From positions 153,291-217,290 of the forward strand of contig NIVC01001971.1 in the NCBI GenBank assembly GCA_002269645.1: a stretch of 64,000 nt of DNA, read 5' to 3'. This document shows, piece after piece, positions 1 through 56,960 of the stretch (its first letter is position 1; each line of letters starts with the position of its first letter). Below the pieces are notes generated by a model. That model saw only the letters and a program-made list of their open reading frames with translations, searched no databases and was not told the origin of the DNA. The position numbers were made by a program, and so were the translations under genes. This DNA comes from Macrostomum lignano. Lineage: Eukaryota.

Positions 1-240
1 GGACAGATCCTAAAAGGACAGATCTCCAGCTTCAGATCCTAAAAGGACAGATCCCCAGCTTCAGATCCTAAAAGGACAGATCCCCAGCTTCAGATCCTAA
101 AAGGACAGATCTCCAGCTTCAGATCCTAAAAGGACAGATCCCCAGCTTCAGATCCTAAAAGGACAGATCCCCAGCTTCAGATCCTAAAAGGACAGATCCC
201 CAGCTTCAGATCCTAAAAGGACAGATCCCCAGCTTCAGAC
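1..240. repeat. 29-bp minisatellite (CAGATCCTAAAAGGACAGATCCCCAGCTT), about 8 copies, truncated by window start; degenerate CAGATCC relics continue to about 480
   Basis: Unit recurs at 4, 33, 62... Confidence 0.95.
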
Positions 241-1283
241 CCGAAAACTCCAGATTCAAAGAAGAGTCTAGATTCTCAAATGAAAGATCCTCAAAATCCC
301 CAAACTTAAAATACTACAAGTTCAGATCCCTAAAGTTCAGATCCTCATCTTCAGGCCCTCTAAGCTCAGATCCCTTAAATTTCAGACCCTAAAGTTTAGA
401 TCATTAACTTCAGATCCTCAAGTTGGAATCCCCAAACTTTAGATCCTTTAAAGACAGATCCCTAAAGTCCAGATCACTAAACTATTTCATTATCTTACCA
501 CTTTAGTAGAGAAACTGAGCCAGTCAAAACAAACACCAACACGTACTCAAAAGATGGTCATAAAAGTAGAAATATTTGAATTTCTTATAAAGCCATAATA
601 AATTCCAGGTAAAACAGATTACCGGGTTGCAGAGATGAGTTCAAGTATTATGAAGGTAGTTTGAAGATAGCTAGCATTACATCATATCCTATTCTATTAG
701 AGTCATAATTTAAGTTTACGACAAAGTAATTCCTGTACTTTATATCCGCGTGGCCATAGACAACTTTTAAAACTTGAGGATACGACGACAGATTACAATT
801 ACAATATGATTATTATACAGATATTGCTATGAAAACCATGTTCTCTAATAAGACTAAATGCCATATTTGGAAGCTTCGAGGATTACGCAAGCTACTATTA
901 ATTCCACAAAAAATGATTTCGCATCGCATTCTAATTGAATGCCGGAAAACATTAAGGTACATTATGTAAAAAAAGATTAGTTTTGCGAGAACCAACTTTT
1001 GAAACTTAAACTTAAGACAAAAACTTTACAGCCAACGATTAAAACAGACAGACAAACAGTTTAAGAGGAAATTAACTTTTCACACCGGAAATCTTATCTA
1101 CTCTTTTTCAGTAGAAAAATTAGCGCTCTCATTTTACTTTATAATAGTAAATAATCTATTTAACTGTACAAGAATTAGCATTTTCCCTGTTTGAAGCTGC
1201 AAAAGAAAAGGGATGGCGCCCCAACCCCCAGCAAGGACGATAAACAGTTGACTTTCCTCTTGCCCGCTTGTGTCTGACTTTGG

Positions 1284-1511
1284 CCTCTCTCCTTACTGCT
1301 CTCTAATTGGCTGAGCTAGATTGGGCCTGCACCCTAGACTTGGTTTCGTCCGTCTGAATTCGACCTCTCTCCTTACTGCTCTCTGATTGGCTGAGCCAGA
1401 TTGGGCCTGTCCTCTAGACTGGGTTTCGTCCGTCTGAATTCGACCTCTCTCCTTACTGCTCTCTGATTGGCTGAGCTAGATTGGACCTGCACCCTAGGCT
1501 GAGTTTCGTCT
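1284..1511. repeat. Three tandem copies of an 80-bp unit containing ATTGG (CCAAT) motifs
   Basis: CCTCTCTCCTTACTGCT starts at 1284, 1364, 1444. Confidence 0.9.
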
Positions 1512-1841: not shown

Positions 1842-4800
1842 TTACGTGTCAGCCAAATGGAAGTCGCTGGGGTCCATCTCGCCATTTTTGCTAGCCCAAT
1901 GGCCGCGATTACAAGAGGCCAGCTCGTCGAACACGACCCGCTTACACTGGGCATAGTCGGCGCATTTCAATGCTCGCAAGCTGACACTGTTCAAGTCTAA
2001 ATATTCACCATCGGCTAATAATCTGCTTTGGATTCGAGCATTAATACGTTTGGCTACCGTCACCGAGGCTGATTGGTTGGCAATCTCTTCAGCCAGTTTG
2101 ACTATTCGCGACAAAGCGGCTCGCTTCGACAGTCTGGAGACTCCGCCACCGTCTAGACTGTCGGTGTCGGGCAGCTGGCGCTCAGCCGGGGTGACATTCT
2201 GCGATCGGCGAATATTTTTCTTACCCTGCGGCCCGTCAATCACTTCGGCTGTGCCGGCACTGCCGTCTACTGGCCGATACCAATTGATTGACAGCACGGC
2301 GGTGTCGGGATCGGTCGAGCCAAGGCGCAGAGGGTCGCTGGTGCGGCCCAGCCAGGGATCGGCCACGAGCTGGTAGGCTGGGGAGGCCAAGCGATGCCGG
2401 AGACGGGGCAGGCGGCAGAGGAAGCCGCGGGCCATGTTGGCGTGACTGTAGCGACCGGCCACGTCTACGGACTGGGGTCGGGGCGGGTGACAGACGTTTG
2501 TGAATGGACTGTAAAATTGGTGAATCTATTTGTGACCACTTGTGAACAGAATGGATATTTAGATGGTGAACAGAAGGGCTATTTGGTGAACAGAATGACT
2601 AGTTGGTGAACAGAATGGCTGCTTGGTGAACAGAATGGCTGCTTGGTGAACAGAATGGCTGCTTGGTGAACAGAATGGCTGCTTGGTGAACAGAATGGCT
2701 GCTTGGTGAACGGAATGGCTGCTTGGTGAACAGAATGGCTAGTTGGTGAACACAATAGCTACTTGGTGAACATAATAATAGCTAGTTGGTGAACCAATTG
2801 GTGAGTTTGCGAGTTGAAAACCTATGCAACCAACAAGGCAAAAGCAAACAAACTGACCTGCAGAAACACTGGCTCAATGAAATTCGCAAGCAGGCCGCCC
2901 TGCAGGCCAACATAGTTGCATAGCAGCAGCTTGTCGGAGCCGCAGTGCACAGCCAGACTGTTAGGATCTTCAGCCTCCTCTAAGCCGAATGTGCGCACCA
3001 TTGAGCAATCGTATTTTTCGTAGCAGGCCAGCGAACCGTAACGAGACAGGTCCGGCTCCAGGACGCCGCATCTAAGGAGCGAATTATGAGGAGTGTGGTA
3101 CTGTACTGAATAGGGATTTGTAAACAGCGGGATACTGAAATGGGGATTTTTACAGAGTGGGAACTGAAATAAGAATGGAAAACAATTTTTGATTTCAAAG
3201 ATTTGGAGTAAAATTGAGCATAGAAAGACGCCCTACTCACTTATCGCGAAGTAGTTCCTCTTGCGAGTGCCGTCCGAGCGGGTCGCCGCCAATCGCTCCG
3301 GCGGAGTCGCCGCCGCTGTCACCTGCGGAACAGTCGCCATCAGGCGGCGAGCTGAGCAGCAGGTGCAAAGCCAGGCCGGGTTTCAAGCGCAGCCGGTCGT
3401 CGCGATTATTTGGCTCCAACCAGCGGCCCTGGCCGGAGAAGTAGGCCGACACCTCCTGGGCTAAGCGAATGCGAAAGGCCCGCTTGGCGCACACAAAAGC
3501 GGTGCTGTCAATCACGAGCTCGCCGTAGGAGTTGTATATGTGCTCCAGCCAGTGATCGTTGACGCTGGAGCCCGTGCCCAGGGCGACCAGCTGCACTGCT
3601 GAGGATTTTTCAGGGTTTCAGTTCTACTGCACTTTGCTTTTATCTGGGATGTTTAGTCTGCGGATTTGGGATAGCGTGGCCCAGCAACTGAGGATCTGGG
3701 AGGCTGGCCCAGAAACTGAGGATCTGGGAGGTTGGCCCAGCAACTGAGGATCTGGGAGGCTGGCCCAGCAACTGAGGATCTGGGAGGCTGGCCCAGCAAA
3801 TGAGGATCTGGGAGGCTGGCCCAGCAACTGAGGATCTGGGAGGCTGGCCCAGAAACTGTGGATCTGGGAGGCTGGCCCAGCAAATGAGGATCTAGGCTGG
3901 CCCAGCAACTGGGGATCTGGGAGGGTGGCCCAGTAACTGGGGATCTGGAAGGCTGGCCCAGCAACTAAGGATCTGGGAGGCTGGCCCAGCAACTAAGGAT
4001 CTGGGAGGCTGGCCCAGCAACTGAGGATCTGGGAGGCTGGCCAAGCAACTGAGGATCTGGGAGGCTGGCCCAGCAACTGAGGATCTGGGAGGCTGGCCCA
4101 GCAACTAAGGATCTGGGAGGGTGGCCCAGCAACTAAGGATCTGGGAGGCTGGCCAAGCAACTGAGGATCTGGGAGGCTAACCCAGCAACTGTGGATCTGG
4201 GAGGCTGGCCCAGCAACTGAGGATCTGGGAGGCTGGCCCAGCAACTGAGGATCTTGGAGGCTGGCCAAGCAACTGAGGATCTGGGAGGCTAACCCAGCAA
4301 CTGTGGATCTGGGAGGCTGGCCCACAGTGGTGTGATTGGAAAGTTTTCCAAATTTCGCGCCGACTGAAAATTTTCGCGCCATGCCAATAATATTCTACTG
4401 ACAGCCAAATAAGTCAATTGATGACACTTTTGAAGATGCGTCTGGCTACCAATTAGCATGTCTCTTAAGTCACAGCCGTGTCCCCCCTGAACTTCTTGTT
4501 GGCGATGTCTGCAGACAGACGACTGCTCGTGCTGGTGATTGACGACGTTGACAGCAGCTCAGCAGCCTTGCGCTTTAAGACGAGCTCAGCTAGCTTCCCT
4601 GCCTTCTTCTGTTTCTTCTTCTGCACATTCTGCTGCTAACGCCTGAGATTGAACTCAGTTTGTTAGATTAATCTCCTAAGCTATGACATTCTTGTATTTC
4701 ATACTGTCTGACAAGAGAGTAAGTGTAAAAAGCAGAAAATAAGAATGCAATTTTCGCGCCCATGGTTCCACAAAATTTCGCGCCAGACCCCCAGGATTCG

Positions 4801-7800
4801 CGCATTCGCGCCATTTTCGCGCCTGGCGCGAATTCGCGCCTGAATCACACCACTGCTGGCCCAGCAACTGAGGATCTGGGAGGCTGGCCAAGCAACTGAG
4901 GATCTGGGAGGCTAACCCAGCAACTGGGGATCTGAGAGGCAGGCCCAGCAACTGGGGATCTGGGAGGCTGGCCCAGCAACTGAGGATCTGGGAGGCTGGC
5001 CCAGCAACTGAGGATCTGGGAGGCTGGCCCAGCAACTAAGGATCTGGGAGGCTGGCCCAGAAACTGTGGATCTGGGAGGGTGGCCCAGCAACTAAGGATC
5101 TGGGAGGGTGGCCCAGCAACTAAGGATCTGGGAGGCTGGCCAAGCAACTGAGGATCTGGGAGGCTGGCCCAGCAACTGTGGATCTGGGAGGCTGGCCCAG
5201 CAACTGAGGATCTGGGAGGCTGGCCCAGCAACTGAGGATCTGGGAGGCTGGCCCAGAAACTGTGGATCTGGGAGGCTGGCCCAGCAACTGAGGATCTGGG
5301 AGGCTGGCCCAGCAACTAAGGATCTGGGAGGCTGGCCCAGAAACTGTGGATCTGGGAGGGTGGCCCAGCAACTAAGGATCTGGGAGGGTGGCCCAGCAAC
5401 TAAGGATCTGGGAGGCTGGCCAAGCAACTGAGGATCTGGGAGGCTAACCCAGCAACTGTGGATCTGGGAGGCTGGCCCAGCAACTGAGGATCTGGGAGGC
5501 TGGCCCAGCAACTGAGGATCTTGGAGGCTGGCCAAGCAACTGAGGATCTGGGAGGCTAACCCAGCAACTGTGGATCTGGGAGGCTGGCCCAGCAACTGAG
5601 GATCTGGGAGGCTGGCCAAGCAACTGAGGATCTGGGAGGCTAACCCAGCAACTGGGGATCTGAGAGGCAGGCCCAGCAACTGGGGATCTGGGAGGCTGGC
5701 CCAGCAACTGAGGATCTGGGAGGCTGGCAGTGGTGGCCTTGCAAGTAGGAATCTGAGAGGGTTCTAAGAAGGCATCTGGTAAACAGACTCTATAAGCATG
5801 GCAATACCCACGGTAAAAGTGGAACCTTAAACTAAAAAGCGACTCACTAGGCTCCGACTGTGGCAATCGCGAATCGGACAAGAATATCGCGGCCACTTTG
5901 TCGACGCCGCCAATTTTGACATCACGAAGCAGAGCGTCCAGCTGCTTCTTGCACTGATCGGCGTAGCGATCGCCAGGGAGAGCGCCAGAGGCGGCCTGCG
6001 CGGTCATTGAGACCAAGGACGCGGCCGGAGAGGCCGAGCGATCCGCGTAGCCGCCGCCGCCGCCGCCGCCGCCGCTGCCACGGGCGATGACATTCAAAGC
6101 TAGCCTGGCTGCCTCCTCCTTGGCCTTCTGCTTGGACTTGGCCTCGCCCGCTTCGTACTCGCTTGGCACTCCGTCAATTGTTAAAATAGCTAAATAGGCA
6201 AAATTTCCGCCCACCTGAACAGTTGTAGGGTTTGGGTAGGCCAGTGTGAAGGAACGCGGAGAGCTGCGAGATATGCGGGAATTCGGGGAAAGGAATGCGG
6301 GACTTTGGGGGAAAGGAATGCGGGACTTTGGGGGAAAGGAATGCGGGACTTCAGGGAAAAGGAATGCGGGACTTTGGGGGAAAGGAATGCGGGACTTTGG
6401 GGGAAAGGAATGCGGGACTTTGGGGGAAAGGAATGCGGGACTTTGGGGGAAAGGAATGCGGGACTTTGGGGAAAGGAATGCGGGACTTTGGGGGAAAGGA
6501 ATGCGGGACTTTGGGGGAAAGGAATGCGGGACTTTGGGGGAAAGGAATGCGGGACTTTGGGGGAAAGGAATGCGGGACTTTGGGGGAAAGGAATGCGGGA
6601 CTTTGGGGGAAAGGAATGCGGGACTTTGGGGGAAAGGAATGCGGGACTTTGGGGGAAAGGAATGCGGGACTTTGGGGGAAAGGAATGCGGGACTTTGGGG
6701 GAAAGGAATGTGGGACTTCGGGAAAAGGAATGTGGGACTTCGGGGGAAAGGAATGTGGGACTTCGGGAAAAGGAATGCGGGACTTCAGGCTCAGGGAAAG
6801 GAATGTGGAAATCGGAGGAAAGGGATGGGAGACTACAGGGAAAAGGGAATACGGGACTTCAGGCTCGGGAAAAGGAGATCCGGGACTTTGGGGAAAGAGG
6901 GATGTGGAACTTCGGGGAAAAGGAATGCGGGACTTCAGGGAAAAGGAATGCGGGACTTCAGGGAAAAGGAATGCGGGACTTCAGGGAAAAGGAATGCGGG
7001 ACTTCAGGGAAAAGGAATGTAGGACTTCAAGATTGGGGAAAAGGAGATCCTAAACTTTGGGGAAAGGGGGATGCGGAACTTCGGGGAAATGGGGGGGGGC
7101 GGCGTAACTTCGGGAAAAGGGGATTGCGGGACTTCGGGAAAAGGGGATTGCGGGACTTCGGGGAAAACGGGGATGTGGGACTTCAGGGAAAACGAGGATG
7201 TGGAACTTCAGGGAAATGGGAAACGGGCCCAGAATTGGGAATGGGAAGCGCAGCAGAAATACATTAATTAAACAAAGAATTAAAACAGCATACCCTAGGC
7301 GCCGTAGGCCTATACTCAATGCTGCCTCGCATGGCAACCGTATACTCATTAAGAATCTGATGCGGCAATTTCTGCGATCTGCCATTAATAAAGGTGCGCA
7401 GCATCTCCTGAGCAGAATCCGATTTGGCCACATTGGCGTACCGAGGCATGCCGTGGGCCCGGTCGGTGGCATCCAGGCTCGGCATTAGGCGCACATTTCC
7501 TGACCGCTCCGATTGGGTGCGGCGATCGATGTACGGCTCCTGACTAGCGGCAGCAGGGCCAGGAGCAGCGGCAAACCCAGATGGAGCCGGCGCGACCTGA
7601 CTATACTGCACCGGTTGCGGCTGCCTCTGCTGACTAGCCAGTCTGTCTCCAGCCTCGCCGCCAAGCGCAGGAAAATCGCCATCGTCAGCTTGAAACTCTT
7701 GAGCCGGTTGGTTCGGCGCCAATAAGCCGAGACTCTGCATCCGACTGCTCAGCGTCACGTGCGAATTCATTGGCAAGTTGAACACTTTTTTAATATGATT

Positions 7801-7911
7801 TTTTGATCCCAAATGCGCCTCGTACTGCGGCCAGGCCGGTATCTGGCCGGATCGGCATACCTGGCACATGTAGGGCGGACCCTCGGATTGCAGCATGTCC
7901 TGGGTAGGCAT
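1842..7911 (-). CDS. ADAR/ADAD-like protein, about 727 aa: C2H2 (JAZ/U1-type) zinc finger, one dsRBD, catalytically inactive adenosine deaminase domain
   Basis: Exons 7911-7294, 6214-5848, 3595-3241, 3071-2858, 2471-1842; GT-AG introns with matching phases (0,1,2,0), total 2184 nt. Motifs: CQVC..HLGSKNH; dsRBD (HQILNEY...AKSKQKAKEEAARLAL); LVALGTG, IDSTAF, LHLLLSSPPDGD, GSDKLLLCNYVGLQGGLLANFIEPVFL, SINW, SRLSK, YAQCK, HWASK align with ADAR2-type deaminase blocks. Start codon assumed. Confidence 0.9.
2580..2795. repeat. 20-bp minisatellite (TTGGTGAACAGAATGGCTGC) in ADAR-like intron 4
   Basis: Period 20 visible from 2604 onward. Confidence 0.9.
3678..5728. repeat. 28-bp minisatellite (GAGGATCTGGGAGGCTGGCCCAGCAACT) in ADAR-like intron 2, interrupted by a MITE
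   Basis: Period 28 (3691, 3719...); explains the spurious LGQPPRS ORFs. Confidence 0.95.
4325..4855. mobile_element. Non-autonomous hAT-type DNA transposon (MITE), 531 bp
   Basis: 13-bp TIR CAGTGGTGTGATT / AATCACACCACTG; 8-bp TSD CTGGCCCA at 4317-4324 and 4856-4863; subterminal TTCGCGCC repeats at both ends; 8-bp TSD with CAG ends is typical of hAT. Confidence 0.9.
6285..7215. repeat. 23-bp G-rich minisatellite (GGGACTTTGGGGGAAAGGAATGC) in ADAR-like intron 1, degenerating toward 7200
   Basis: 23-aa periodic ORFs equal 3 x 23 nt. Confidence 0.95.
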
Positions 7912-8869
7912 TTCTTTATGCTGGCAATTGATCTGCCGATACAAATACAATAATATTACTGTAAGTAGTGCGATTTCAACCGAAACTGATCAGTGGCATA
8001 AAAATTAAAATTAATTCACTGATGCAAAATTTTAATAGAGAAAATTGATACACGTTATAAGCAAAGCCATTGCAATCACCCTAGAATGGAAAGAAAGCAT
8101 TTTTCATAAATTCAACTTGACAGTTGAAGTGTATGACTAGCTATAAAACTCAGTCTCACCCACAGAGAATAAGGCAACCACTGTTTAAAGCTTATGGTTT
8201 TATAAACTCTAAATTCAAAAAAATGATTAACTAAAAATACAAAAATTATAATAGATAGGAAAATAAGTATGTAAAATTAATATTACCAAAATATAATAAC
8301 CAATTAGAATTTAATATCCTAGACCCTATTTAATAAAGAGTATAAAAAGATACTTATGATTTTCTATTAGCTTTCATTTTTCTTAATTTCCATAATTGAA
8401 ATCAACTTGTAATAATATTCAATGACATTTATCAGCCTGTCATTCACTAAATACAGCTAATAAAATGATACAATTAATGAACATTAAAAGCCTCAAATTT
8501 TTAATAAGTTTTAATATGAGTATTTTCACTTTCATTTCAGGGGGCTAAAGCTCTAAAGTCCCTAGCATTGGGGATTTAAACAACAGAGTTTCAACACCAT
8601 GTGCACATTGGGGTTGGGTGGTGGGGCTAAAGTTAAAATGAATGTTATTGCTTTCAATGTGAAGGGAGCTCTCAAGTCCCTAGAATTGGGAACTCAAGCA
8701 ACAAAGACAGAAATGTTTGACACTACATTTAGAGATTGCTAGATTACAAATGAGGCTTCTTGGAAATCAACTGTTGAGTAGGCTATCAGCCTCAAAGAAG
8801 ATCTTGCATGGTAATAATTGGAGACTTTTTTACTTTAGTTACTTAAACAATGAGAAAATATGTCAGGAG

Positions 8870-15112: not shown

Positions 15113-16552
15113 ATGGAATTTGTAACTAACTTTCGTACTCTTTCGTACGTCAATTACATCGGCGTTGACGATTTCTCCGATCGTCTGAGCTACCAGATTA
15201 GCAGCAGCATCCTGACCGTGCTGGGCATACTGGTGACAGCGCGTACCTACGCTATGATGCCGATCGCCTGCTACATACCGCAGGGATTCGGCTTTGAGAA
15301 AGGCGGCCAGCTGGACTTTGTGGATCAATACTGTCTGACAGAGGGCACTTACGCTGTTGATGTCAGGCATTTCCATCTTCATAGCGAACGAAACGATGGC
15401 GGGCTGAGCGCCTATGCGGAGCATAAAATCTACTACTACCAGTGGGTGCCTCTTGTGCTCGGCTTCCAGGCTGTGCTGTGCTGCCTGCCCCGCCTGGTCT
15501 GGCGCATGGTCAGCTTCGACCGGGCCGGCACTGACGTCGGGCGAATCGTCAAGCTGGCCAAGGACGCCTCGGAGGACTCTAGCGGCGGCCTGACGCGCAG
15601 GCGGATGGTCACGCATATTGCCAGGTTAATCGAGAGGATGATCAAACGACGCCTGCCACCGAAGAAAGAGGAAAGTGGACAGTTAGACGCCCGGGCGCGC
15701 CTAATTGTGGCCTGGCGCACGTTCAGTCGCATGAAGCCATCGCAGCTTAGTGGAAACTACCTGATTATTACCTATCTGCTAATCAAGTTTGCCTACCTGT
15801 TGAACGCCGTAGGCCAGTTGCTTACAATGAAAGAGTTTCTACAATTGAACTCCACGCGCTACACGATGCCTGGAATTGATCTACTCAGAGAGGTGCTGGC
15901 CGACATCGACTGGCAGAACACCATGGTGTTCCCTCGAGTGGGCGCCTGCGCCGTGAAGATGCGCTCCGCCGTTGGAGTGAACTGGCTGTACGCCCAGTGC
16001 GCCCTGCCGGTCAACATGATCAACGAGAAGATTTACGTATTTCTGTGGTTCTGGTTCTTCGTGGTCGCCGTGGTAACAATAGTGAGCGCATTCGGTTGGC
16101 TCTACCGTCTGGCCTGGCGCTTCAGCCTGATCAACTTTGTCAAGGACTACCTGCGTCTAGCGGACAACTATAGCGAACTAAAATCTAAAAAGCATTTGAT
16201 GCACAAGTTTGTTAAGCGGTATTTGAGTCGCGACGGTGCCTTCTTAATGAAAATGATTGCGCTCAACTGCGGTGATATGGTCTGCGCAGACGTGGTCAAC
16301 GCTATGTGGGAGAGCTTTCTGTTGCGCGAGAAACTTGGCGACGCCTCGAATTCAACGGAGTTGCCCGGACTGCTGGCTCTGAACTGCCGCGGGCTGCCCG
16401 CTTCCAACTGCGTGAATAGGCGCAGAAAAATGCTGAGATGGCAGAAGAGCGCACCGGAGTCAAATCAACCACCAGCGGACTTGGACGAGCTGGCTGAGCA
16501 CGCCGCGGAGCTGGAGCAGTGCCGGAAGGAGGGCCGCGAGATCGACCCCTGA
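15113..16552 (+). CDS. inx: Innexin (gap junction/pannexin family), 479 aa, intronless
   Basis: YYQWVP signature, extracellular Cys pairs (IACY...QYCLTEGTY; GAC...AQCALPVNMINEKIY), four hydrophobic segments. Confidence 0.97.
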   Translation: MEFVTNFRTLSYVNYIGVDDFSDRLSYQISSSILTVLGILVTARTYAMMPIACYIPQGFGFEKGGQLDFVDQYCLTEGTYAVDVRHFHLHSERNDGGLSAYAEHKIYYYQWVPLVLGFQAVLCCLPRLVWRMVSFDRAGTDVGRIVKLAKDASEDSSGGLTRRRMVTHIARLIERMIKRRLPPKKEESGQLDARARLIVAWRTFSRMKPSQLSGNYLIITYLLIKFAYLLNAVGQLLTMKEFLQLNSTRYTMPGIDLLREVLADIDWQNTMVFPRVGACAVKMRSAVGVNWLYAQCALPVNMINEKIYVFLWFWFFVVAVVTIVSAFGWLYRLAWRFSLINFVKDYLRLADNYSELKSKKHLMHKFVKRYLSRDGAFLMKMIALNCGDMVCADVVNAMWESFLLREKLGDASNSTELPGLLALNCRGLPASNCVNRRRKMLRWQKSAPESNQPPADLDELAEHAAELEQCRKEGREIDP

Positions 16553-18395: not shown

Positions 18396-19805
18396 ATGGA
18401 GGACGTGCGGAACGACCAGGGCGGCAATTTCAGCTGCACCAGCTGCAGCAAGGCGCTCACCGGGCAGCGCTACATCCTGCGCGAGGAGAAGCCGCACTGC
18501 ATTCAGTGCTACGAGCAGGTGTTCGCTAACAGCTGCGAACAATGCAAGGAGAAGATTGGCTGCGATTCCAAGGTAAGCTGGATGGTAACATGTAATATTG
18601 ACTTATCAAAAAACAGTAAACGCAAATTGCATGTACCCGTATGAGTAGTTGGAGCGACGTTTTTTTAGTAAAGGTTCTTCTTTAGAAGCTTTTCAAAAGG
18701 ACCGTACTACTTTAGTATAACAGTACGTGAAACTCAGAGATCGTGTAATGTTTTACACCTTCTTTACACCTTTGACACTGGAATGGAGATTAGTAGGCTA
18801 TTGTGTCCGTTAAGTTTCGGCTTAGTTCCCATTGCTAAGTATATAATGGTACAAGCGGATTCCCGTCCTCTCCAGGACCTGTCGTACAAGGACCGGCACT
18901 GGCACGAGCGCTGCTTCAAGTGCTCCTCCTGCCAGGGCAGCCTGGTTGACAAGCCCTTCGCCACTAAAGACGACGCGTTGTTCTGTTCAAATTGTCACGA
19001 CGAAAAATACGCCGCCCGTTGCGACGGCTGCGGCAAGCCGTTCAACGCCGGGATTCGCAAGTACGAATACCACGGCAAGCAGTGGCATGAGGACTGCTTC
19101 CTGTGCAAGGAGTGCCGAGAGCCAATTGGCAGCCGTTCGTTCATCCCGCGCGACCAAGAGGTCTGCTGCGTGCCCTGCTACGAGCAGAAGTACGCGCAGA
19201 AGTGCCGCAAATGCGAGCAGGCTATTAAACGCGGCGGAGTCACGTACAAAGGCGAGCCCTACCACAAGGAGTGCCTGGTGTGCGGCAACTGCAACGGGCA
19301 GCTGGCTGGAGTGAAGTTCACCAGCAAGGAGAACAAGCCCTACTGTGCCGAATGCTACGGCCAACTATTTGCTAAGAAGTGCTGTCGCTGCACCCAGCCA
19401 ATCACGGGTCAGTCAGTGCGCTAACCTGGGGTTACGACCAGTAGTATTATTAGGACATTGAAGCTTGAGAAAGGAAATGACGAGACCAATCTTGCCTTTA
19501 ACTTTTGTTTTCCATAGTAAATTGCATCGAATAAGGTTTTATTATAATACGAAAAGTAAAGGGCAGAGAAGCTCAGCGGAAAAATTTATTCTTTTAAGTT
19601 TGGGGCAGAATTTCTTTTGATAATAAATAGAAAAATTCTCTGAACACATTCAAACCTAGGCTTCGGTGGCTGCAAGTTCATCTCGTTCGAGGACAGGCAC
19701 TGGCACTCGGACTGCTTTGTGTGCTACAAGTGCTCAGTGAACCTGGTCGGCCGCGGCTTCTTAACAGACGGCGATGAAATTCTGTGTCCGGAGTGCGGCC
19801 GCTGA
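18396..19805 (+). CDS. FHL2: Four-and-a-half LIM domain protein (FHL2/Limpet/LIM-9 family), about 284 aa
   Basis: Exons 18396-18572, 18876-19407, 19660-19805 (855 nt, GT-AG, phases 0,1); half-LIM plus 4 LIM domains; DLSYKDRHWH, GGVTYK, FISFEDRHWH motifs. A 5-prime exon may end at the GTGAGT donor near 18142. Confidence 0.95.
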
Positions 19806-30207: not shown

Positions 30208-30852
30208 TCAGCCTCGCCAATCGTCCCCATCGATGTCGTCCTCATCGTCGCTGCTGACTTCGGCGTCGATGAACTCCAGCACGGCTGCCGGGTCGAATGG
30301 CTTCAACGAGGAGGCGACTCCGTCCGGTCGTTCTTCGCCGCCGACGCTGTAGTCGGTGAGCATAGCAACGGTTGCTAGGGGCTCATCGCCAGGCGCCGGC
30401 TGACGAACGGCGAGTCTCCGGTGACGCAGGCGGGCGCAGCAGAGGTAGCCGAGCACCAGCAGCAGCAGCAGCAGCAGGGCTACAAAAAGGAACACCGATA
30501 CGAATGCCGCAGTGCTGAGGTCGAGAGTCGACGGCAGCAGCGGGATGTCGCAGTTGTAGCCGGTGTAGCCGCTCGGGCACTCGCAGCTCGGCTGGTCCAG
30601 CCGCTCCTCAATCCGGCTGTGCGCCACCGACCATTTCACCGCCACGGTGCAGCGGCCGCCGTTGGCGCAGTAGATCTGCTCGTGCGGCTCGCATGGCACC
30701 TTGCGGAATACAAACGGGCGAAGGTATTCAGCTGGCGGCAGCTGCACCCGGGCTGGCTGGCGGCCGCAGGCGTCCACCACAAGCGGCGTAGGCGCCAGCA
30801 ACAGCGGCAACAGTGATGGAAGCAGCGACTTGGCCGAATAGTAATGTCGCAT
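30208..30852 (-). CDS. Membrane-anchored EGF-like ligand precursor (TGF-alpha/neuregulin-like layout), 214 aa, intronless
   Basis: N-terminal hydrophobic signal, six-Cys EGF module C-x7-C-x5-C-x21-C-x-C-x8-C, a hydrophobic TM followed by RLRHRR, acidic cytoplasmic tail. Confidence 0.85.
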   Translation of the reverse strand: MRHYYSAKSLLPSLLPLLLAPTPLVVDACGRQPARVQLPPAEYLRPFVFRKVPCEPHEQIYCANGGRCTVAVKWSVAHSRIEERLDQPSCECPSGYTGYNCDIPLLPSTLDLSTAAFVSVFLFVALLLLLLLVLGYLCCARLRHRRLAVRQPAPGDEPLATVAMLTDYSVGGEERPDGVASSLKPFDPAAVLEFIDAEVSSDDEDDIDGDDWRG

Positions 30853-31980: not shown

Positions 31981-32415
31981 TTAAGGGAGACTCAGAAGCA
32001 ACCACAAGATTGAGATGGTAGGAGATTCAGCTGGGGAAGTGAGAAGTGCGAGCCTCAACGAGTTCGCAAGCCCACTTGCCCCGAGAGTCCCGTTATCTAT
32101 ACACAAAGATTCGCCCACGAAGTCCCCCAAACTCCGTGCATAGCTGGCCTTTTCCTGCGCGTTATACTCGCAGCTATTTTTGGGCAAATATTGTTTGTTC
32201 CACAAGTCGCCAAATTAGTAGAACAATATCAGCCTTACGTCCACCACATGCATGCAGGCTTATCACTCAGAGCGTGAAAATGAGCAGACTTTGGACTAAA
32301 TCTTTTACGTGCTCACTGTCTAATACGCCCTCGTATCTGAAACACAGAAATACTAATGCAGCACGATAACTCTATTAATATGACATCACAAAGGCTATTA
32401 TAGTAGATAAATGGG

Positions 32416-35147
<2,732 letters not shown>

Positions 35148-35631
35148 AGGTAGCAGCTGAAAGCAGAACCGCATTCTTCGCAGCGATTTCCCATGAAGCC
35201 AGTGGCCGAGAGTGCGGTCTCTCCAGTCTGCAGTTTCTCGATTAATTATTTTTGCGTGTATCAAACATTTTCTTGTTGCTCGCGTGGCTGCATGCACAGA
35301 CTATACTAGCTGTATTCGCAGCCTGTAAGCAAGGGTTATTGTGTACACTTGCAAGGAACCTATACAGCCTTGTTCGAGTCAAACCGTGCTATGCATGTAA
35401 TAAAGACGCCCAACCGCTGTGTGAATAGCAAGGCCAATTCCAGATCAAGTTGCAATTCAAGGCTTAGAGCCCCTTGTGTAGCGGCATTGAAATGCGAAGG
35501 CGGCTAGCTGTGCGCAATACAGAACAACGTCTTTTTCCATTTTCGGAACCCCCATTTTGCCACCAAGTTTATTTTACATTGTTAGAATGGGGATGCTGAT
35601 TGCTGATGATATTTGTAGCTAGGAGATGTGG

Positions 35632-41946: not shown

Positions 41947-42696
41947 TTACACGAAAAAGTCTTCGAAGACAGGTTCATATTCTTCTTCCTGACAAACTGC
42001 GCAAACTTTGGACCTCGTGACCGGGTCTAGCTGTTTATATGCCTCTAGAGAAGTTATTTTATGCAAGTGGAATGTGAAACTGCAGGCGACAACTTCGCAA
42101 AAAATTAGAAACTCGACTTTATCAATACGCATTTCAATTGCCTGCCTCAAGTAGTGCAGGAGGGACTCCATGTCTTGCTTTAAAGATGGATGCTTGAGAT
42201 CCTGGTGAAAGCGCTGGCACTCGGACCAAATAAATTTCACCGCCTTCGCCAGTGGAGAGACCATCTGGTACTCCTTGAAGAAAGCCATTGCCGGCATAAC
42301 ATTGCTGCTATTAAAAGCAACAGTCTCATTAGAAAACTCCGCAGAGAATGTAGACAGAAATTTAACTACAAAGCGAACTGTGGAAGCCAACTTGCCAGGC
42401 AATTCAATGCGAGCTTCGGCCGCCTCTTTGAAGTTGGAATTCTTGTTGAGCATCGCTCGGAACACCGGAGAGTGTACGCACAGGACATAAGAATTGGTCA
42501 ATATCTCAACTTTAGGACCCGCTGTATCCGGAATGCCATCACCATCAGGCTCATCATCATAATCAACGAGCAGAACAACAGGTCCGCATGTCAGCTTAGC
42601 CATATCCTTGACTCTCTGTTCAGCATCCGAAACAGACTGGGGCGGTTTGTAATAGCGCCACGCCCAATAGGGAAACTCGAACGGTGTTAAAGACAT
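41947..42696 (-). CDS. BTB/POZ domain protein, paralogue 1, 249 aa, intronless
   Basis: NSYVLCVHSPVFRAML...FKEA..ARIELP...VRFVVKFL BTB signature. Confidence 0.88.
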   Translation of the reverse strand: MSLTPFEFPYWAWRYYKPPQSVSDAEQRVKDMAKLTCGPVVLLVDYDDEPDGDGIPDTAGPKVEILTNSYVLCVHSPVFRAMLNKNSNFKEAAEARIELPGKLASTVRFVVKFLSTFSAEFSNETVAFNSSNVMPAMAFFKEYQMVSPLAKAVKFIWSECQRFHQDLKHPSLKQDMESLLHYLRQAIEMRIDKVEFLIFCEVVACSFTFHLHKITSLEAYKQLDPVTRSKVCAVCQEEEYEPVFEDFFV

Positions 42697-45497: not shown

Positions 45498-46277
45498 CTA
45501 GGGCAAGTTTTTCTGACAAACTGCGCAAACTTTGGACTTCGTGATCGGATCCAGCCGTTTATAAGCTCCTAGCGAAGTTACTTTTTCCACGCTGTTAAGC
45601 ATATTTGAAGAACTGAAGCCAACTCTAATTTCGCAAAGAATCAGACACTCGACTTCATCAATACGCATCTCAGCCGCCTGTCTCAAGTAGTGCAGGAGGG
45701 ACTCCAGGATTGGCGTTACAGACTGATGATTGAGATAGTTATGAAATCGCTGGCACTCGGACCGAATAAATTTAACCGCCTTCGCCAGTGGAGAGACCAT
45801 CTGGTACTCCTTGAAGAAAGCCATTGCCGGCATAACATTGCTGCTATTAAAAGCAACAGTCTCATTAGAAAACTCCGCAGAGAATGTAGACAGAAATTTA
45901 ACTACAAAGCGAACTGTGGAAGCCAACTTGCCAGGCAATTCAATGCGAGCTTCGGCCGCCTCTTTAAAGTTGGCACTCTTGTTGAGCATCGCTCGGAACA
46001 CCGGAGAGTGTACGCACAGGACATAAGAATTGGTTGCTATCTCAGTGTTTTTAGGAATGACTCTATCCGGAATAGGAGTACCATCAGCTATAGCATCATC
46101 ATCATCATCCTCCATAAAATCAGACAAATTATACTCATAATCAACGAGCAGAACAACAGGTCCGCATGTCAGCTTAGCCATCTCCTCCTTGACTCTCTGT
46201 TCAGCATCCGAAACAGACTGGGGCGGTGAGACATTGCGCCACGCCCAATAAGGAAACTCGAACGGTGTTAAAGACAT
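45498..46277 (-). CDS. BTB/POZ domain protein, paralogue 2, 259 aa, intronless
   Basis: Same N-terminus MSLTPFEFPYWAWR and same BTB core as paralogue 1; ATG at 46277 chosen by homology. Confidence 0.88.
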   Translation of the reverse strand: MSLTPFEFPYWAWRNVSPPQSVSDAEQRVKEEMAKLTCGPVVLLVDYEYNLSDFMEDDDDDAIADGTPIPDRVIPKNTEIATNSYVLCVHSPVFRAMLNKSANFKEAAEARIELPGKLASTVRFVVKFLSTFSAEFSNETVAFNSSNVMPAMAFFKEYQMVSPLAKAVKFIRSECQRFHNYLNHQSVTPILESLLHYLRQAAEMRIDEVECLILCEIRVGFSSSNMLNSVEKVTSLGAYKRLDPITKSKVCAVCQKNLP

Positions 46278-46359
46278 CTTTTGCGGCGGCTGCGCGTTCA
46301 GATTAAATCCAGCGACAGAAGAAAAGTATATTTCAGTTTTAGATAATATAGAACACGGG

Positions 46360-47720
46360 GATTGAGACACCACTAAACTCCCATGCAGTCTCATATTAGG
46401 GATGAGACACCACTAAAATCCCATGCAGTCTCATATTAGGGATGAGACACCACTAAAATCCCATGCAGTCTCATATTGGGGATGAGACACCGCTAAAATC
46501 CCAGTTTAATATTGGGGATAAAAAACACCGCTAAAATCCCAGTTTGATATTGGGGATAAAAAACACCGCTAAAATCCCAGTTTGATATTGGGGATAAAAA
46601 ACACCGCTTAAATCCCAGTTTAATATTGGGGATAAAAACACCGCTAAAATCCCAGTTTGATATTGGGGATAAAAAACACCGCTAAAATCCCAGTTTGATA
46701 TTGGGGATAAAAAACACCGCTAAAATCCCAGTTTAATATTGGGGATAAAAAACACCGCTAAAATCCCAGTTTGGTATTAGCGATAAAAAACACCGCTAAA
46801 ATCCCAGTTTGATATTGGGGATAAAAACACCGCTAAAATCCCAGTTTGATATTGGGGATAAAAAACACCGCTAAAATCCCAGTTTAATATTGGGGATAAA
46901 AACACCGCTAAAATCCCAGTTAATTAATATTGGGGATAAAAACACCGCTAAAATCCCAGTTTGATATTGGGGATAAAAACACCTCTAAAATCCCAGTTTG
47001 ATATCGGGGATAAAAACACCGCTAAAATCCCAGTTTGATATTGGGGATAAAAACACCGCTTAAATCCCAGTTTGATATTGGGGATAAAAACACCGCTAAA
47101 ATCCCAGTTTAATATTGGGGATAAAAACACCGCTAAAATCCCAGTTTAATATTGGGGATAAAAACACCGCTAAAATCCCAGTTTGATATTGGGGATAAAA
47201 ACACCGCTAAAATCCCAGTTTAATATTGGGGATAAAAACACCGCTAAAATCCCAGTTTGATATTGGGGATAAAAACACCTCTAAAATCCCAGTTTGATAT
47301 TGGGGATAAAAACACCGCTAAAATCCCAGTTTGATATTGGGGATAAAAACACCGCTTAAATCCCAGTTTGATATTGGGGATAAAAACACCGCTTAAATCC
47401 CAGTTTGATATTGGGGATAAAAACACCGCTAAAATCCCAGTTTGATATTGGGGATAAAAACACCGCTAAAATCCCAGTTTGATATAGGGGATAAAAACAC
47501 CGCTAAAATCCCAGTTTAATATTGGGGATAAAAACACCGCTAAAATCCCAGTTTAATATTGGGGATAAAAACACCGCTAAAATCCCAGTTTGATATTGGG
47601 GATAAAAACACCGCTAAAATCCCAGTTTAATATTGGGGATAAAAACACTGCTAAAATCCCAGTTTGATATTGGGGATAAAAACACTGCTAAAATCCCAGT
47701 TTGATATTGGGGATAAAATC
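46360..47720 (-). repeat. 40-bp satellite (about 3 copies) grading into a 37-38-bp variant array
   Basis: First units are the reverse complement of the 35.6-39.8 kb unit; then AAAATCCCAGTTTGATATTGGGGATAAAAACACCGCT. Confidence 0.95.
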
Positions 47721-52115: not shown

Positions 52116-52317
52116 AGCGCCGCCCGAAGCTGAATGACCGCCGGTTGGGGCAGCGGCGGCGGGGGCTGCTGTCGAATCCTCATTGGACTGTTGCTGACGC
52201 TCTTCAGCAGCAGTCGAGATCAACTGAGGTGGCTGCTGCTGCGACTGGAATAGTATAGAAAGTTCCGATTTATCAGATAGAATCTCAGCAATGAGAGCGC
52301 ATGAGTAACTGAGGCGA

Positions 52318-56300: not shown

Positions 56301-56960
56301 CGGCTGACCTGCTCTGACACCTGCGCGTGCGGGGCAGGCGACACTATCTGCGACATCAGCTAAGGGCTCCAGTCTCCGCCATCACCTAAGGGTTCCAGTC
56401 TCCGACATCAGCTAAGGGTTCCAGTCTCCGACATCACCTAAGGGTTCCAGTCTCCGAGATCAGCTAAGGGTTCCAGTCTCCGACATCAGCTAAGGGTTCC
56501 AGTCTCCGACATAAATCAGGAATCAGTCTCCAGCATTATTTCAAGAATAATGCTAGTCCATAAGGCCCCAATATCCAGCAGGCTTACCTGTTGATCATCC
56601 TCCGACCCAAGCAGCTCAGGCCGTCCAAAGCTCTCCATCCCAGCCAGCAGCAGGGCGAACTGCCTGCCCCAATCGCCCAGATAATTAATCCCAATAACCC
56701 GATGCCCGAATGCTCTATTAATCTGCACCACAAAATTGCCCAACACCGTGGCTCGAAGATGACCAGCGTGCAAAGGTTTGGCCACATTGACCGAGCTGAA
56801 ATCCACAAACACTGGCGCCGATTGCGGCCCGCGGCTGGGGCAGCTGGCATCGCGCACCGCGCCATTCAACGCTGACAGGCTGGGCCAGGCCGTAGGCGGG
56901 CCCGGCTCGGATTACAGCCGAAACCGCATCGCTGACGCGCTTGGCTACCGGCGCCGACAT
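53342..56960 (-). CDS. RARS2: Arginyl-tRNA synthetase, mitochondrial type; two apparent frameshifts in this sequence
   Basis: Exons 56960-56588, 56320-55911, 55231-54816, 53708-53342; VDFSSVNVAKPLHAGHLR (HIGH), INYLGDWG, KRDGSSLY..RDL, GMSTR, QYCHARLCSL, YEP, MRLLGLTP. Frame breaks near 56830 and 54860. Confidence 0.88.
53750..54745. repeat. 33-34-bp minisatellite (GGGGCTGATGCTACTGCTATCCCCTGGGTCTTCA) in RARS2 intron 3
   Basis: Period 34 (54241, 54275). Confidence 0.95.
55390..55835. repeat. GA-rich purine tract in RARS2 intron 2
   Basis: Direct reading. Confidence 0.9.
56350..56512. repeat. 26-bp minisatellite (CAGCTAAGGGTTCCAGTCTCCGACAT) in RARS2 intron 1
   Basis: Period 26 (56401, 56427). 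Confidence 0.9.

What the first reader, a model, noticed from the sequence alone, without database searches (positions are those of the whole stretch)
1842..7911. Zinc finger + dsRBD + catalytically dead ADAR fold: a candidate editing regulator or dsRNA reader
Seen: the gene has an intact five-exon frame. Aligned to ADAR2, all four catalytic or zinc residues are replaced (CHAE to STAF, PCGD to PDGD, SCSDK to CGSDK). Most IP6-pocket positions remain (D, K/R pair, SDK, YxxxK, WxxK). Known: inactive ADAD1/2 and worm ADR-1 act as editing regulators, and JAZ/ZFR-type C2H2 fingers (e.g. Zn72D) bind dsRNA and modulate editing. Inference: fusing such a finger to a dead deaminase is an architecture I do not recognise from ADAR/ADAD families. 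It may be a lineage-specific pseudoenzyme that scaffolds or competes with active ADARs.
Basis: partly seen in the sequence, partly recalled or inferred. Interest (0 to 1): 0.75.

Follow-up and report, generated by a model that had tools for sequence, protein, structure and literature searches.

The report
Flatworm ADAD-like dead deaminase gene
This is a real, transcribed Macrostomum lignano (flatworm) gene for an RNA-binding protein that keeps the shape of an RNA-editing enzyme but has lost its catalytic centre; that makes it a divergent member of the known ADAD family, and the zinc finger at its front end is only an unproven motif.

Summary
The gene is real. It has five GT-AG exons on the minus strand (7911-1842) and encodes 728 aa. 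It is identical, apart from a NAGNAG acceptor choice, to the RNA-seq-guided GenBank model PAA62120.1 of Macrostomum lignano.

Pfam, AlphaFold2 and Foldseek confirm one dsRBD (aa 165-253) and an ADAR-fold deaminase domain (aa ~285-715). The active site is dead: His394→Thr, Glu396→Phe, Cys451→Asp. The third zinc Cys is displaced by one residue. About two thirds of the IP6-pocket positions survive.

Three genomic copies differ with dN/dS ≈ 0.15-0.2, so the gene is not a pseudogene. One copy does carry a nonsense codon.

The closest relatives are spiralian and deuterostome 'ADAD1-like' proteins. Gastropod ADAD1-likes share the same DST and PPDGD substitutions. Tree support is weak, however, because this protein sits on a long branch.

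The N-terminal C-x2-C-x13-H-x5-H motif is unlikely to be chance (0.2% of shuffles). No zinc-finger motif or Pfam zinc-finger family was found in the 149 listed relatives. Even so, the motif fails every Pfam threshold, AlphaFold2 does not fold it, and no orthologue exists to test its conservation.

Verdict: a new, divergent member of the known ADAD kind with a candidate extra finger. An editing-regulator role is speculative, since mouse ADAD1/2 do not affect editing.

The parts
7294..7911 (-). Exon 1 (aa 1-206): start codon, CCHH motif, low-complexity linker and the N-terminal half of the dsRBD
   Evidence: First in-frame ATG after the upstream stop at 7990-7992. Donor AGG|GTATGC. No gaps against the two paralogous copies.
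7795..7872 (-). Candidate zinc finger, aa 14-39: YMCQVCRSGQIPAWPQYEAHLGSKNH (C-x2-C-x13-H-x5-H)
   Evidence: Pattern confirmed. Seen in 0.19% of shuffles. Pfam zf-met only 10-13.5 bits against a cut-off of 21.2. AF2 pLDDT 30-57 and no Foldseek match.
7432..7779 (-). Pro/Ala/Gln-rich linker, aa 45-160, predicted disordered
   Evidence: AF2 pLDDT about 30-40. No homologue aligns to query aa 1-141. 4 of the 7 replacement differences between copies fall in this linker, and a fifth (G35V) lies in the finger motif.
7294..7419 (-). dsRBD, N-terminal part (aa 165-206)
   Evidence: Pfam dsrm. AF2 helices 165-175 and 183-193, strand 196-203, pLDDT about 90 or higher.
6074..6214 (-). dsRBD, C-terminal part (aa 207-253), including KSKQKAK (the KKxAK RNA-contact motif, second Lys changed to Gln)
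5848..6214 (-). Exon 2 (aa 207-329, first base of codon 329): end of the dsRBD, a Gly8 run, and the start of the deaminase domain
   Evidence: Acceptor TTCAG|GTG, donor CTA|GTGAGT.
3241..3598 (-). Exon 3: deaminase core with DSTAF (3495-3509; H394 to T, E396 to F), AKRAF (the K/R pair) and PPDGD (3333-3347; C451 to D). NAGNAG acceptor at 3598/3595.
   Evidence: Both acceptor choices occur in public models.
2858..3071 (-). Exon 4: unconserved base-flipping-loop region and HCGSDK (2930-2947; third zinc Cys displaced, IP6 Lys kept)
   Evidence: AF2 pLDDT below 50 for aa 449-481.
1842..2471 (-). Exon 5: C-terminal half of the deaminase fold with SRLSK, YAQCK and WASK (IP6-pocket positions) and the TAA stop
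   Evidence: The acceptor CCCCAG|TCC gives a gap-free match to ADAR2 VEPIYFSSIILG.

Best explanation
The locus is an expressed, selectively maintained Macrostomum lignano gene. It encodes a non-catalytic, ADAD-like member of the ADAR family.

Shown:
- One canonical dsRBD and a complete ADAR deaminase fold.
- The fold cannot bind the catalytic zinc or activate water (His to Thr, Glu to Phe, Cys to Asp, third Cys displaced).
- It still keeps most residues of the buried inositol-hexakisphosphate pocket and 55 of 81 family-conserved positions. The domain is therefore kept as a folded module, not as an enzyme.

Inferred mechanism: the protein binds structured or double-stranded RNA through the dsRBD. 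Helix-1 Glu and two of the three Lys of KKxAK are retained. The dead deaminase domain serves as an RNA- or protein-docking surface. It would thus act as a stoichiometric RNA-binding or RNP-scaffold factor, as vertebrate ADAD1/ADAD2 do in germ cells, independently of A-to-I editing.

The ~160-residue N-terminal extension is mostly disordered. Its single CCHH motif may be a U1/matrin/zf-met-type zinc finger that adds a second RNA or protein contact. I give that roughly even odds.
For: - Gene model and transcript-based public models agree. The GenBank annotation is RNA-seq-guided (PMC5730564).
- A_deamin scores 91.9 bits, E 7e-26.
- AF2 is confident for the dsRBD and the deaminase core. Foldseek gives TM 0.74-0.83 to ADAR1, ADAR2 and Hydra ADAR deaminase domains, and matches ADAR1 dsRBD3.
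- Catalytic replacements.
- Conserved-column audit: 55 kept, 26 changed.
- Purifying selection among three copies: 15 synonymous versus 7 replacement differences, dN/dS 0.15, P = 2e-5.
- The best named homologues are ADAD1-like proteins of Potamilus, Lingula, Littorina, Acanthaster, Aplysia, Physella and Branchiostoma.
- Aplysia and Physella ADAD1-like proteins share DST/DSS and PPDGD.
- The ADAD-clade HMM scores the domain best, 161.5 bits against 132 or less.
- ADAD1/2 have editing-independent germline roles (PMC7360552; PMC10437952).
Against: - Orthology to ADAD is not robust. The protein sits on a very long branch: the next-best hit in 1.84 billion representatives has E 2e-21 at 31% identity.
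- NJ bootstrap for placement with ADAD-likes is only 11/50.
- With the catalytic motifs masked and clade size matched, the ADAD HMM advantage over an ADAT-like clade disappears.
- No expression pattern, RNA target or partner is known. The gene was not found in the two held supplementary files of one germline/neoblast study.
- One of the three genomic copies has a premature stop at codon 505, so dosage may be relaxing.
- RNA binding by the dsRBD is inferred from motifs only. The beta1-beta2 loop lacks the usual GPxH.
Confidence: 0.8

Rival explanations
1. Tripartite dsRNA reader. The N-terminal CCHH motif is a functional zf-met/JAZ/U1-type zinc finger that binds A-form RNA. Together with the dsRBD and the dead deaminase it forms a new ADAD variant.
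For: - The ligand pattern with an aromatic residue at -2 and H-x5-H spacing is typical of U1/matrin/JAZ-type fingers (sequence).
- Chance occurrence is 0.19% in shuffles, and 0 of 20,000 for the strict form.
- All weak Pfam hits are to C2H2 families of this class: zf-met, zf-C2H2_2, KIN17, jaz, ZNF451.
- The motif sits just after the first in-frame ATG of the transcript-supported ORF.
- All four ligands are kept in three copies.
- A single-sequence AF2 run places both His on a predicted helix, 27-43.
Against: - Below every Pfam gathering score, even after artificially removing one spacer residue (best 17.9 against 21.2).
- The x13 spacer is one residue longer than in zf-met.
- AF2 pLDDT is 30-40 in the full-length model and 57 alone, and there is no Foldseek match.
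- The three copies are too similar (98-99%) for ligand conservation to mean anything.
- One copy has G35V inside the motif.
- A public 652-aa model (A0A1I8HRL3) starts downstream of the finger.
- No orthologue is available.
Confidence: 0.4
2. Editing regulator. Like C. elegans ADR-1 or vertebrate ADAR3, the protein competes with active ADARs for dsRNA substrates or recruits them, and so changes editing levels.
For: - A dead deaminase plus a dsRBD is also the make-up of ADR-1.
- Flatworms do have active ADAR1 and ADAR2 homologues with CHAE (planarians, PMC8797187).
- The dimer-forming ADAR fold is retained.
Against: - The closest named relatives are ADAD1-like, and mouse ADAD1/2 loss does not change editing efficiency or site choice (PMC7360552).
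- ADR-1 has two dsRBDs (my own knowledge, not tested here); this protein has one.
- There are no data on editing in M. lignano here.
- The base-flipping loop and the R522/W523 equivalents are not conserved.
Confidence: 0.2
3. Independent decay. The gene is not an ADAD orthologue but a lineage-specific duplicate of a flatworm ADAR (or an ADAT1-derived gene that captured a dsRBD). It lost catalysis on its own and resembles ADADs by convergence and long-branch attraction.
For: - Weak bootstrap support (11/50).
- Loss of the ADAD HMM advantage after masking the motifs and matching clade size.
- It clusters with other long-branch dead proteins: a tardigrade 'editase B2-like' and a Panagrolaimus protein.
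- No flatworm ADAD was found in the literature searched.
Against: - The same rare replacements occur in gastropod ADAD1-like proteins (His to Thr in DST; Cys to Asp in a PPxGD context).
- The unmasked ADAD HMM is best by 29 bits.
- Single-dsRBD architecture.
- Faint similarity of RLMPSL to the ADAD N-terminal YIPGL motif.
Confidence: 0.3
4. Pseudogene or annotation artefact.
For: One paralogous copy (NIVC01001199.1) has CAG to TAG at codon 505. The catalytic site is destroyed.
Against: - The 2187-nt frame is intact across five canonical introns in two copies.
- dN/dS is 0.15-0.21 with P down to 2e-5.
- Transcript-guided models exist.
- The fold is confidently predicted.
Confidence: 0.03

Closest known systems
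ADAD1/ADAD2 (TENR-type adenosine deaminase domain-containing proteins) and the invertebrate 'ADAD1-like' proteins of molluscs, brachiopods, echinoderms and amphioxus
   Same: - One dsRBD followed by an ADAR-fold domain lacking the catalytic His, Glu and Cys.
- These are the best named sequence matches.
- The same DST and PPDGD replacements occur in Aplysia and Physella.
- IP6-pocket residues are retained.

   Different: - Only about 25% identity, on a very long branch with weak tree support.
- It lacks the second, degenerate dsRBD-like segment that many spiralian ADAD-likes carry, having a Gly run there instead.
- It lacks the clear YIPGL N-terminal motif.
- It has a ~160-aa N-terminal extension with a CCHH motif that none of them has.
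- The nearly invariant Trp (ADAR2 W523) is Cys.
C. elegans ADR-1 / vertebrate ADAR3 (inactive ADAR-family editing regulators)
   Same: dsRNA-binding domains plus a catalytically inactive deaminase domain. Action by binding rather than by catalysis.
   Different: ADR-1 and ADAR3 have two dsRBDs and derive from ADAR lineages (my own knowledge). There is no sequence affinity to them here beyond the family level. A regulatory effect on editing is untested.
Active ADAR1/ADAR2 deaminase domains (PDB 1zy7, 9b83, 9dp5)
   Same: Same fold (Foldseek TM 0.74-0.83). Same IP6-pocket motifs: SDK, SRLxK, YxxxK, WxxK.
   Different: All zinc and catalytic ligands are lost or displaced. The base-flipping loop is not conserved and is predicted with low confidence.
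zf-met / zf-C2H2_jaz / U1-type C2H2 fingers (JAZ/ZNF346, ZFR/Zn72D, matrin, U1C)
   Same: CCHH ligands with a long H-x5-H spacing, an aromatic residue two positions before the first Cys, and a basic tail (HIKK).
   Different: The spacer is x13 instead of x12. Profile scores are below threshold, no fold is predicted, and there is one copy rather than an array. The resemblance is a lead, not a membership.

Membership tests
ADAR-family deaminase domain (Pfam A_deamin, PF02137) | Profile match above the gathering score over the whole domain | tested here: met
   91.9 bits against a cut-off of 27, E 7e-26, profile positions 1-327 of 329.
ADAR-family deaminase domain (Pfam A_deamin, PF02137) | ADAR deaminase fold | tested here: met
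   AF2 core pLDDT mostly 85-97. Foldseek E 1e-19 to 1e-15 and TM 0.74-0.83 to ADAR1, ADAR2 and Hydra ADAR.
Catalytically active ADAR | Zinc ligands His394, Cys451, Cys516 and the proton-shuttle Glu396 (hADAR2 numbering) | tested here: not met
   Thr361, Asp415 and Phe363 occupy these positions. Gly492 sits at the Cys516 column, with Cys491 one position earlier.
ADAD (ADAD1/2-like) | Architecture: one dsRBD plus one deaminase domain (Grice & Degnan criterion, PMC4323055) | tested here: met
   One dsrm and one A_deamin, with an additional N-terminal extension.
ADAD (ADAD1/2-like) | Loss of catalytic residues | tested here: met
   The replacements are shared with gastropod ADAD1-like proteins.
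ADAD (ADAD1/2-like) | Phylogenetic placement of the deaminase domain inside the ADAD clade | tested here: inconclusive
   The NJ tree places it beside the ADAD-like clade, and the clade HMM is best (161.5 against 132 bits). Bootstrap is 11/50, however, and the advantage vanishes after masking motifs and matching clade size.
ADAD (ADAD1/2-like) | Germ-cell-restricted expression and a fertility phenotype | not testable with these tools
   No expression data are reachable. The gene ids are absent from the two held supplementary files of PMC5816591.
dsRBD (Pfam dsrm, PF00035) | Profile match and alpha-beta-beta-beta-alpha fold | tested here: met
   23.9 bits on the isolated segment (cut-off 23) and 18.8 in the full-length scan. 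AF2 pLDDT 90-97. Foldseek matches ADAR1 dsRBD3, PKR, TRBP and Staufen dsRBDs.
zf-met / JAZ / U1-type C2H2 zinc finger | CCHH ligand pattern with long His spacing | tested here: met
   C16-x2-C19-x13-H33-x5-H39. The spacer is one residue longer than the zf-met consensus.
zf-met / JAZ / U1-type C2H2 zinc finger | Profile score at or above the gathering score | tested here: not met
   zf-met scores 10.3-13.5 bits against 21.2, and jaz is not reported for the native sequence. The best artificial one-residue-deletion variant scores 17.9 bits.
zf-met / JAZ / U1-type C2H2 zinc finger | Predicted beta-beta-alpha fold | tested here: inconclusive
   pLDDT is 30-40 in the full-length model. Alone it is 56.7, with helices but no hairpin, and there are no Foldseek hits. 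The alignment for this region is shallow and no zinc is modelled.
zf-met / JAZ / U1-type C2H2 zinc finger | Conservation of the ligands in orthologues; zinc and dsRNA binding | not testable with these tools
   No orthologue was found in any search. Biochemistry is required.

The most novel reading that the evidence does not exclude
The CCHH motif is a working U1/JAZ-type RNA-binding zinc finger, acquired by a flatworm ADAD lineage. That would give a three-module reader of structured RNA (finger + dsRBD + dead deaminase) not seen in the 149 listed ADAR/ADAD/ADAT representatives. Such a protein might partner with or antagonise the active flatworm ADARs, or act in germline or neoblast RNP granules.
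Probability: 0.3. Interest if true: 0.55.

Novelty: new member of a known kind. Interest (0 to 1): 0.3.

Why it matters
ADAD-type pseudo-deaminases are essential for vertebrate germ-cell development, but their molecular mechanism is unresolved. Their history outside vertebrates is known mainly from architecture surveys that did not include flatworms.

A selectively maintained ADAD-like gene in Macrostomum lignano offers a tractable system. This flatworm has transgenesis, RNAi, a visible germline and neoblasts. It could be used to ask what a dead ADAR fold does.

If the N-terminal finger is real, it would also be a natural experiment in adding an RNA-binding module to the family. If it is not, the gene is simply one more divergent ADAD, already present in public databases as an uncharacterised 'DRBM domain-containing protein'.

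Tried and rejected
1. Word-indexed protein searches found only the M. lignano cluster itself. I tried the full protein, the deaminase domain alone, and a 21-sequence alignment. Low-complexity words probably swamped the candidate lists. No orthologue at 50-90% identity was recovered, so conservation of the finger could not be tested.

2. The exhaustive search returned 389 family hits, but none matches query aa 1-141.

I used the identical-bar-NAGNAG public model P0003 instead.

4. AF2 of aa 1-50 alone and the Foldseek search of that model gave nothing usable.

5. Deleting one spacer residue to mimic the x12 spacing raised zf-met only to 17.9 bits. The insertion alone does not explain the weak score.

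6. I tried the exon 5 acceptor at TTTTACAG|TCC. It gives the wrong frame, or a stop in the alternative donor frame. The acceptor CCCCAG|TCC is in frame and matches both ADAR2 and the public models.

7. No vertebrate ADAR2 representative was among the 150 listed hits. IP6 numbering therefore rests on the HMMER alignments to PDB chains and on my memory of the Macbeth 2005 ligand list.

8. No AATAAA or ATTAAA signal lies within 640 nt downstream of the stop.

9. Literature searches found no paper on ADAD or ADAR in Macrostomum, and none on a zinc-finger-ADAD fusion.
Full report
**Source and gene model**

The window is genomic DNA of the flatworm Macrostomum lignano. The spliced product is 99-100% identical to M. 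lignano proteins A0A1I8H8C9, PAA62120.1 (BOX15_Mlig013792g1) and relatives.

I rebuilt the gene on the minus strand from open frames and splice signals:
- Exons are 7911-7294, 6214-5848, 3598-3241, 3071-2858 and 2471-1842.
- All four introns are GT-AG.
- The CDS is 2187 nt, encoding 728 aa, with TAA at 1844-1842.
- The ATG at 7911 is the first in-frame ATG after a stop at 7990-7992.

My model differs from PAA62120.1 only by the choice between two tandem acceptors (CAG|CAG; TV versus M at aa 329-330). GenBank models of this assembly were derived from genome-guided RNA-seq transcript assemblies and TransDecoder ORFs (PMC5730564). The five-exon structure therefore has transcript support.

That fear is moot. 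The CCHH motif (aa 14-39) and the first half of the dsRBD (aa 165-206) lie in the same uninterrupted exon 1.

**Domains**

Pfam finds A_deamin (aa 334-713, 91.9 bits, E 7e-26). It also finds dsrm, at 18.8 bits in the full protein and 23.9 bits on the isolated segment, against a cut-off of 23.

AlphaFold2 was run with a 51-sequence alignment:
- A textbook dsRBD at aa 165-253, with pLDDT 90-97.
- A confident deaminase core.
- pLDDT of only 30-40 for aa 1-162 and for the Gly-rich linker.

Foldseek matches the model to human ADAR1, human ADAR2, C. elegans ADR-2 and Hydra ADAR deaminase domains (E 1e-19 to 1e-15, TM 0.74-0.83). It matches the dsRBD to ADAR1 dsRBD3 and other dsRBDs.

**Catalytic site and IP6 pocket**

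The evidence comes from HMMER alignments to ADAR1 and ADAR2 structures and a MAFFT alignment of 150 family representatives:
- DSTAF aligns with DCHAE: His394 to Thr361, Glu396 to Phe363.
- PPDGD aligns with (A/S)PCGD: Cys451 to Asp415.
- At MSCSDK the flatworm has HCGSDK. Ungapped, Cys516 becomes Gly with a Cys one residue earlier. HMMER instead keeps the Cys and inserts the Gly.

Either way no zinc site can form, because His and one Cys are gone and the proton-shuttle Glu is Phe.

For the IP6-pocket positions (ligand list from my memory of Macbeth et al. 2005):
- Kept: the Asp392, R400/R401 (K367/R368), K519, K629 (SRLSK), Y668/K672 (YAQCK) and W687/K690 (WASK) equivalents.
- Not kept: R522 (Leu), W523 (Cys, where 47 of 49 relatives have Trp) and S531 (Ala).
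- Ambiguous: K662, because of a 6-residue insertion.

Overall, 55 of 81 columns conserved in at least 80% of 49 relatives are retained.

**Is it a live gene?**

Two further genomic copies were fetched (L001 from NIVC01002874.1 and L002 from NIVC01001199.1).
- The window copy and L001 differ by 15 synonymous and 7 replacement changes: dS 0.029, dN 0.0043, ratio 0.15. The binomial P is 2e-5 against neutrality.
- The other pairs give ratios of 0.16 and 0.21.
- Five of the seven replacements lie in the N-terminal 162 residues. None lies in the deaminase core (aa 290-650).
- L002 carries CAG to TAG at codon 505, which explains why its GenBank protein is a 526-aa 'partial'.

The gene family is under purifying selection, but one copy may be decaying.

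**Relatives**

An exhaustive HMMER scan of 1.84 billion cluster representatives found 389 family members. Only the query's own cluster scored below 1e-30. The next hit is E 2e-21 at 31% identity, and no hit matches query aa 1-141.

Named top hits are 'adenosine deaminase domain-containing protein 1(-like)' from Potamilus, Lingula, Littorina, Acanthaster, Aplysia, Physella and Branchiostoma. There are also some ADAR-like proteins from Priapulus and Ptychodera.

Thirty-three of the 149 listed relatives (plus the query itself) lack at least one catalytic residue. The gastropod ADAD1-likes show LDSTCLT/SHPPDGDY (Aplysia) and LDSSCLT/SHPPDGDY (Physella). These are the same His-to-Thr/Ser and Cys-to-Asp replacements, in the same PPxGD context, as the flatworm protein.

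Evidence on tree placement is mixed:
- A neighbour-joining tree puts the flatworm protein beside the ADAD-like clade, together with two other long-branch dead proteins.
- An HMM of the ADAD-like clade scores it best: 161.5 bits, against 132 for an ADAT-like clade and 120 or less for ADAR clades.
- Bootstrap support is poor (11/50).
- After masking the three motifs and matching clade sizes, the ADAD advantage disappears.

I conclude that ADAD affinity is the best reading but is not proven. Independent decay of another paralogue remains possible. By the architecture criterion used in the literature (one dsRBD plus one deaminase domain; PMC4323055) it is ADAD-like. The ADAD surveys I could read did not include flatworms. 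The planarian study reports only active ADAR1 and ADAR2 homologues.

**The finger**

The motif Y14-M-C16-Q-V-C19-(x13)-H33-L-G-S-K-N-H39 is present in the three fetched genomic copies and their public protein models; a fourth public model, the 652-aa A0A1I8HRL3, starts downstream of it.

In its favour:
- Such a pattern occurs in 0.19% of shuffles of this protein. The stricter form with the aromatic residue occurs in none of 20,000 shuffles.
- Among the 149 relatives, C2H2-like patterns occur only by chance inside the deaminase domain, never upstream of it.
- No zinc-finger Pfam family is matched in 51 relatives scanned.
- The weak Pfam hits are all to C2H2 families of the U1/matrin/JAZ kind.

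Against it:
- Pfam gives only zf-met at 10.3-13.5 bits (cut-off 21.2), aligned to the second half of the motif.
- Removing one spacer residue in silico lifts this at best to 17.9 bits.
- PDB sequence search gives E of about 1.
- AF2 does not fold the region, and a single-sequence run (pLDDT 56.7) finds no structural neighbour.
- With copies 98-99% identical and no orthologues, conservation is uninformative.

The finger is thus a reasonable candidate at roughly even odds, not an established domain.

**Function**

What is shown is a folded, non-catalytic ADAR-type domain joined to a dsRBD and maintained by selection.

What is inferred is RNA binding without editing. The dsRBD keeps the helix-1 Glu and K234/K238 of KKxAK.

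Mouse Adad1 and Adad2 mutants are sterile with unchanged editing (PMC7360552). Zebrafish Adad1 needs its dead deaminase domain for germ-cell maintenance (PMC10437952). By homology, the most likely role is therefore an editing-independent RNA-binding or RNP-scaffold function, possibly in the germline. An ADR-1-like effect on editing is a minority alternative. No tool here can test either.

**Verdict**

The protein is a pseudoenzyme and the N-terminal motif is unusual for the family. However, the core architecture is the ordinary, already catalogued ADAD form, the gene is already in public databases as an uncharacterised protein, and the finger is unverified. I file it as a new, very divergent member of a known kind, of modest interest.

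Noticed in passing
window 2564-2776, 3677-5728, 6273-7027: Three of the four introns of the gene are largely made of minisatellites: a 20-mer x10.6, a 28-mer x73 and a 23-mer x32.5. Intron lengths differ strongly between the three genomic copies. Intron 2 is 2249 nt here, 1427 nt in L001 and 536 nt in L002. The arrays therefore expand and contract quickly while the exons stay 98-100% identical.
   Followed up: partly
window 4319-4861: A ~540-bp insertion interrupts the 28-mer array. It is bounded by 19-nt terminal inverted repeats (GGCCCACAGTGGTGTGATT / AATCACACCACTGCTGGCC) and is rich in TTCGCGCC motifs. It looks like a MITE-type non-autonomous transposon.
   Followed up: partly
L002 6261-6474 (NIVC01001199.1), codon 505 of the gene: One of the three genomic copies carries CAG to TAG (Q505*) in exon 4, which truncates the deaminase fold. 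GenBank lists its product as a 526-aa 'partial' protein. This is either a decaying homeologue or an assembly error.
   Followed up: partly
window 3595-3598: NAGNAG tandem acceptor (CAG|CAG) at exon 3. The UniProt model uses the upstream site (…PTVQL…) and the GenBank model the downstream one (…PMQL…).
   Followed up: no
window 1272-1510 and 1580-1626: Three 80-bp tandem repeats, each containing GATTGGCTGAG (a CCAAT box on the other strand), lie just beyond the 3' end of the gene. They are followed on the + strand by ATG…CGCTCG|GTAAGT, which could be a short first exon of a convergent or overlapping neighbour. Unexplained.
   Followed up: no
window 4-481: 29-bp satellite (CAGATCCTAAAAGGACAGATCCCCAGCTT x8.4) and degenerate 15/29-bp derivatives at the window edge.
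   Followed up: no
window 15113-16552 (+), 18783-19424 (+), 30208-30852 (-), 41947-42696 (-), 45498-46394 (-), 51699-52301 (-), 55856-56356 (-): Neighbouring coding pieces: a single-exon innexin (E 1e-80); an FHL-like multi-LIM exon; an EGF-domain membrane protein; two tandem BTB-domain paralogues; a protein-kinase N-lobe exon directly downstream of an in-frame 'HEGHIAQS' minisatellite; and an arginyl-tRNA synthetase fragment.
   Followed up: partly
window ~32300-35300: A ~3-kb simple repeat gives artificial ORFs of more than 900 aa on the minus strand (SIYL/CMYV repeats) and an extreme GC skew of 0.65.
   Followed up: no
alignment A1, N-termini of ADAD-like proteins: Spiralian ADAD1-like proteins share a conserved N-terminal 'YIPGL' motif shortly before the dsRBD. 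The flatworm protein has only a faint counterpart (RLMPSL, aa ~141-146). I do not know of a described function for this motif.
   Followed up: no
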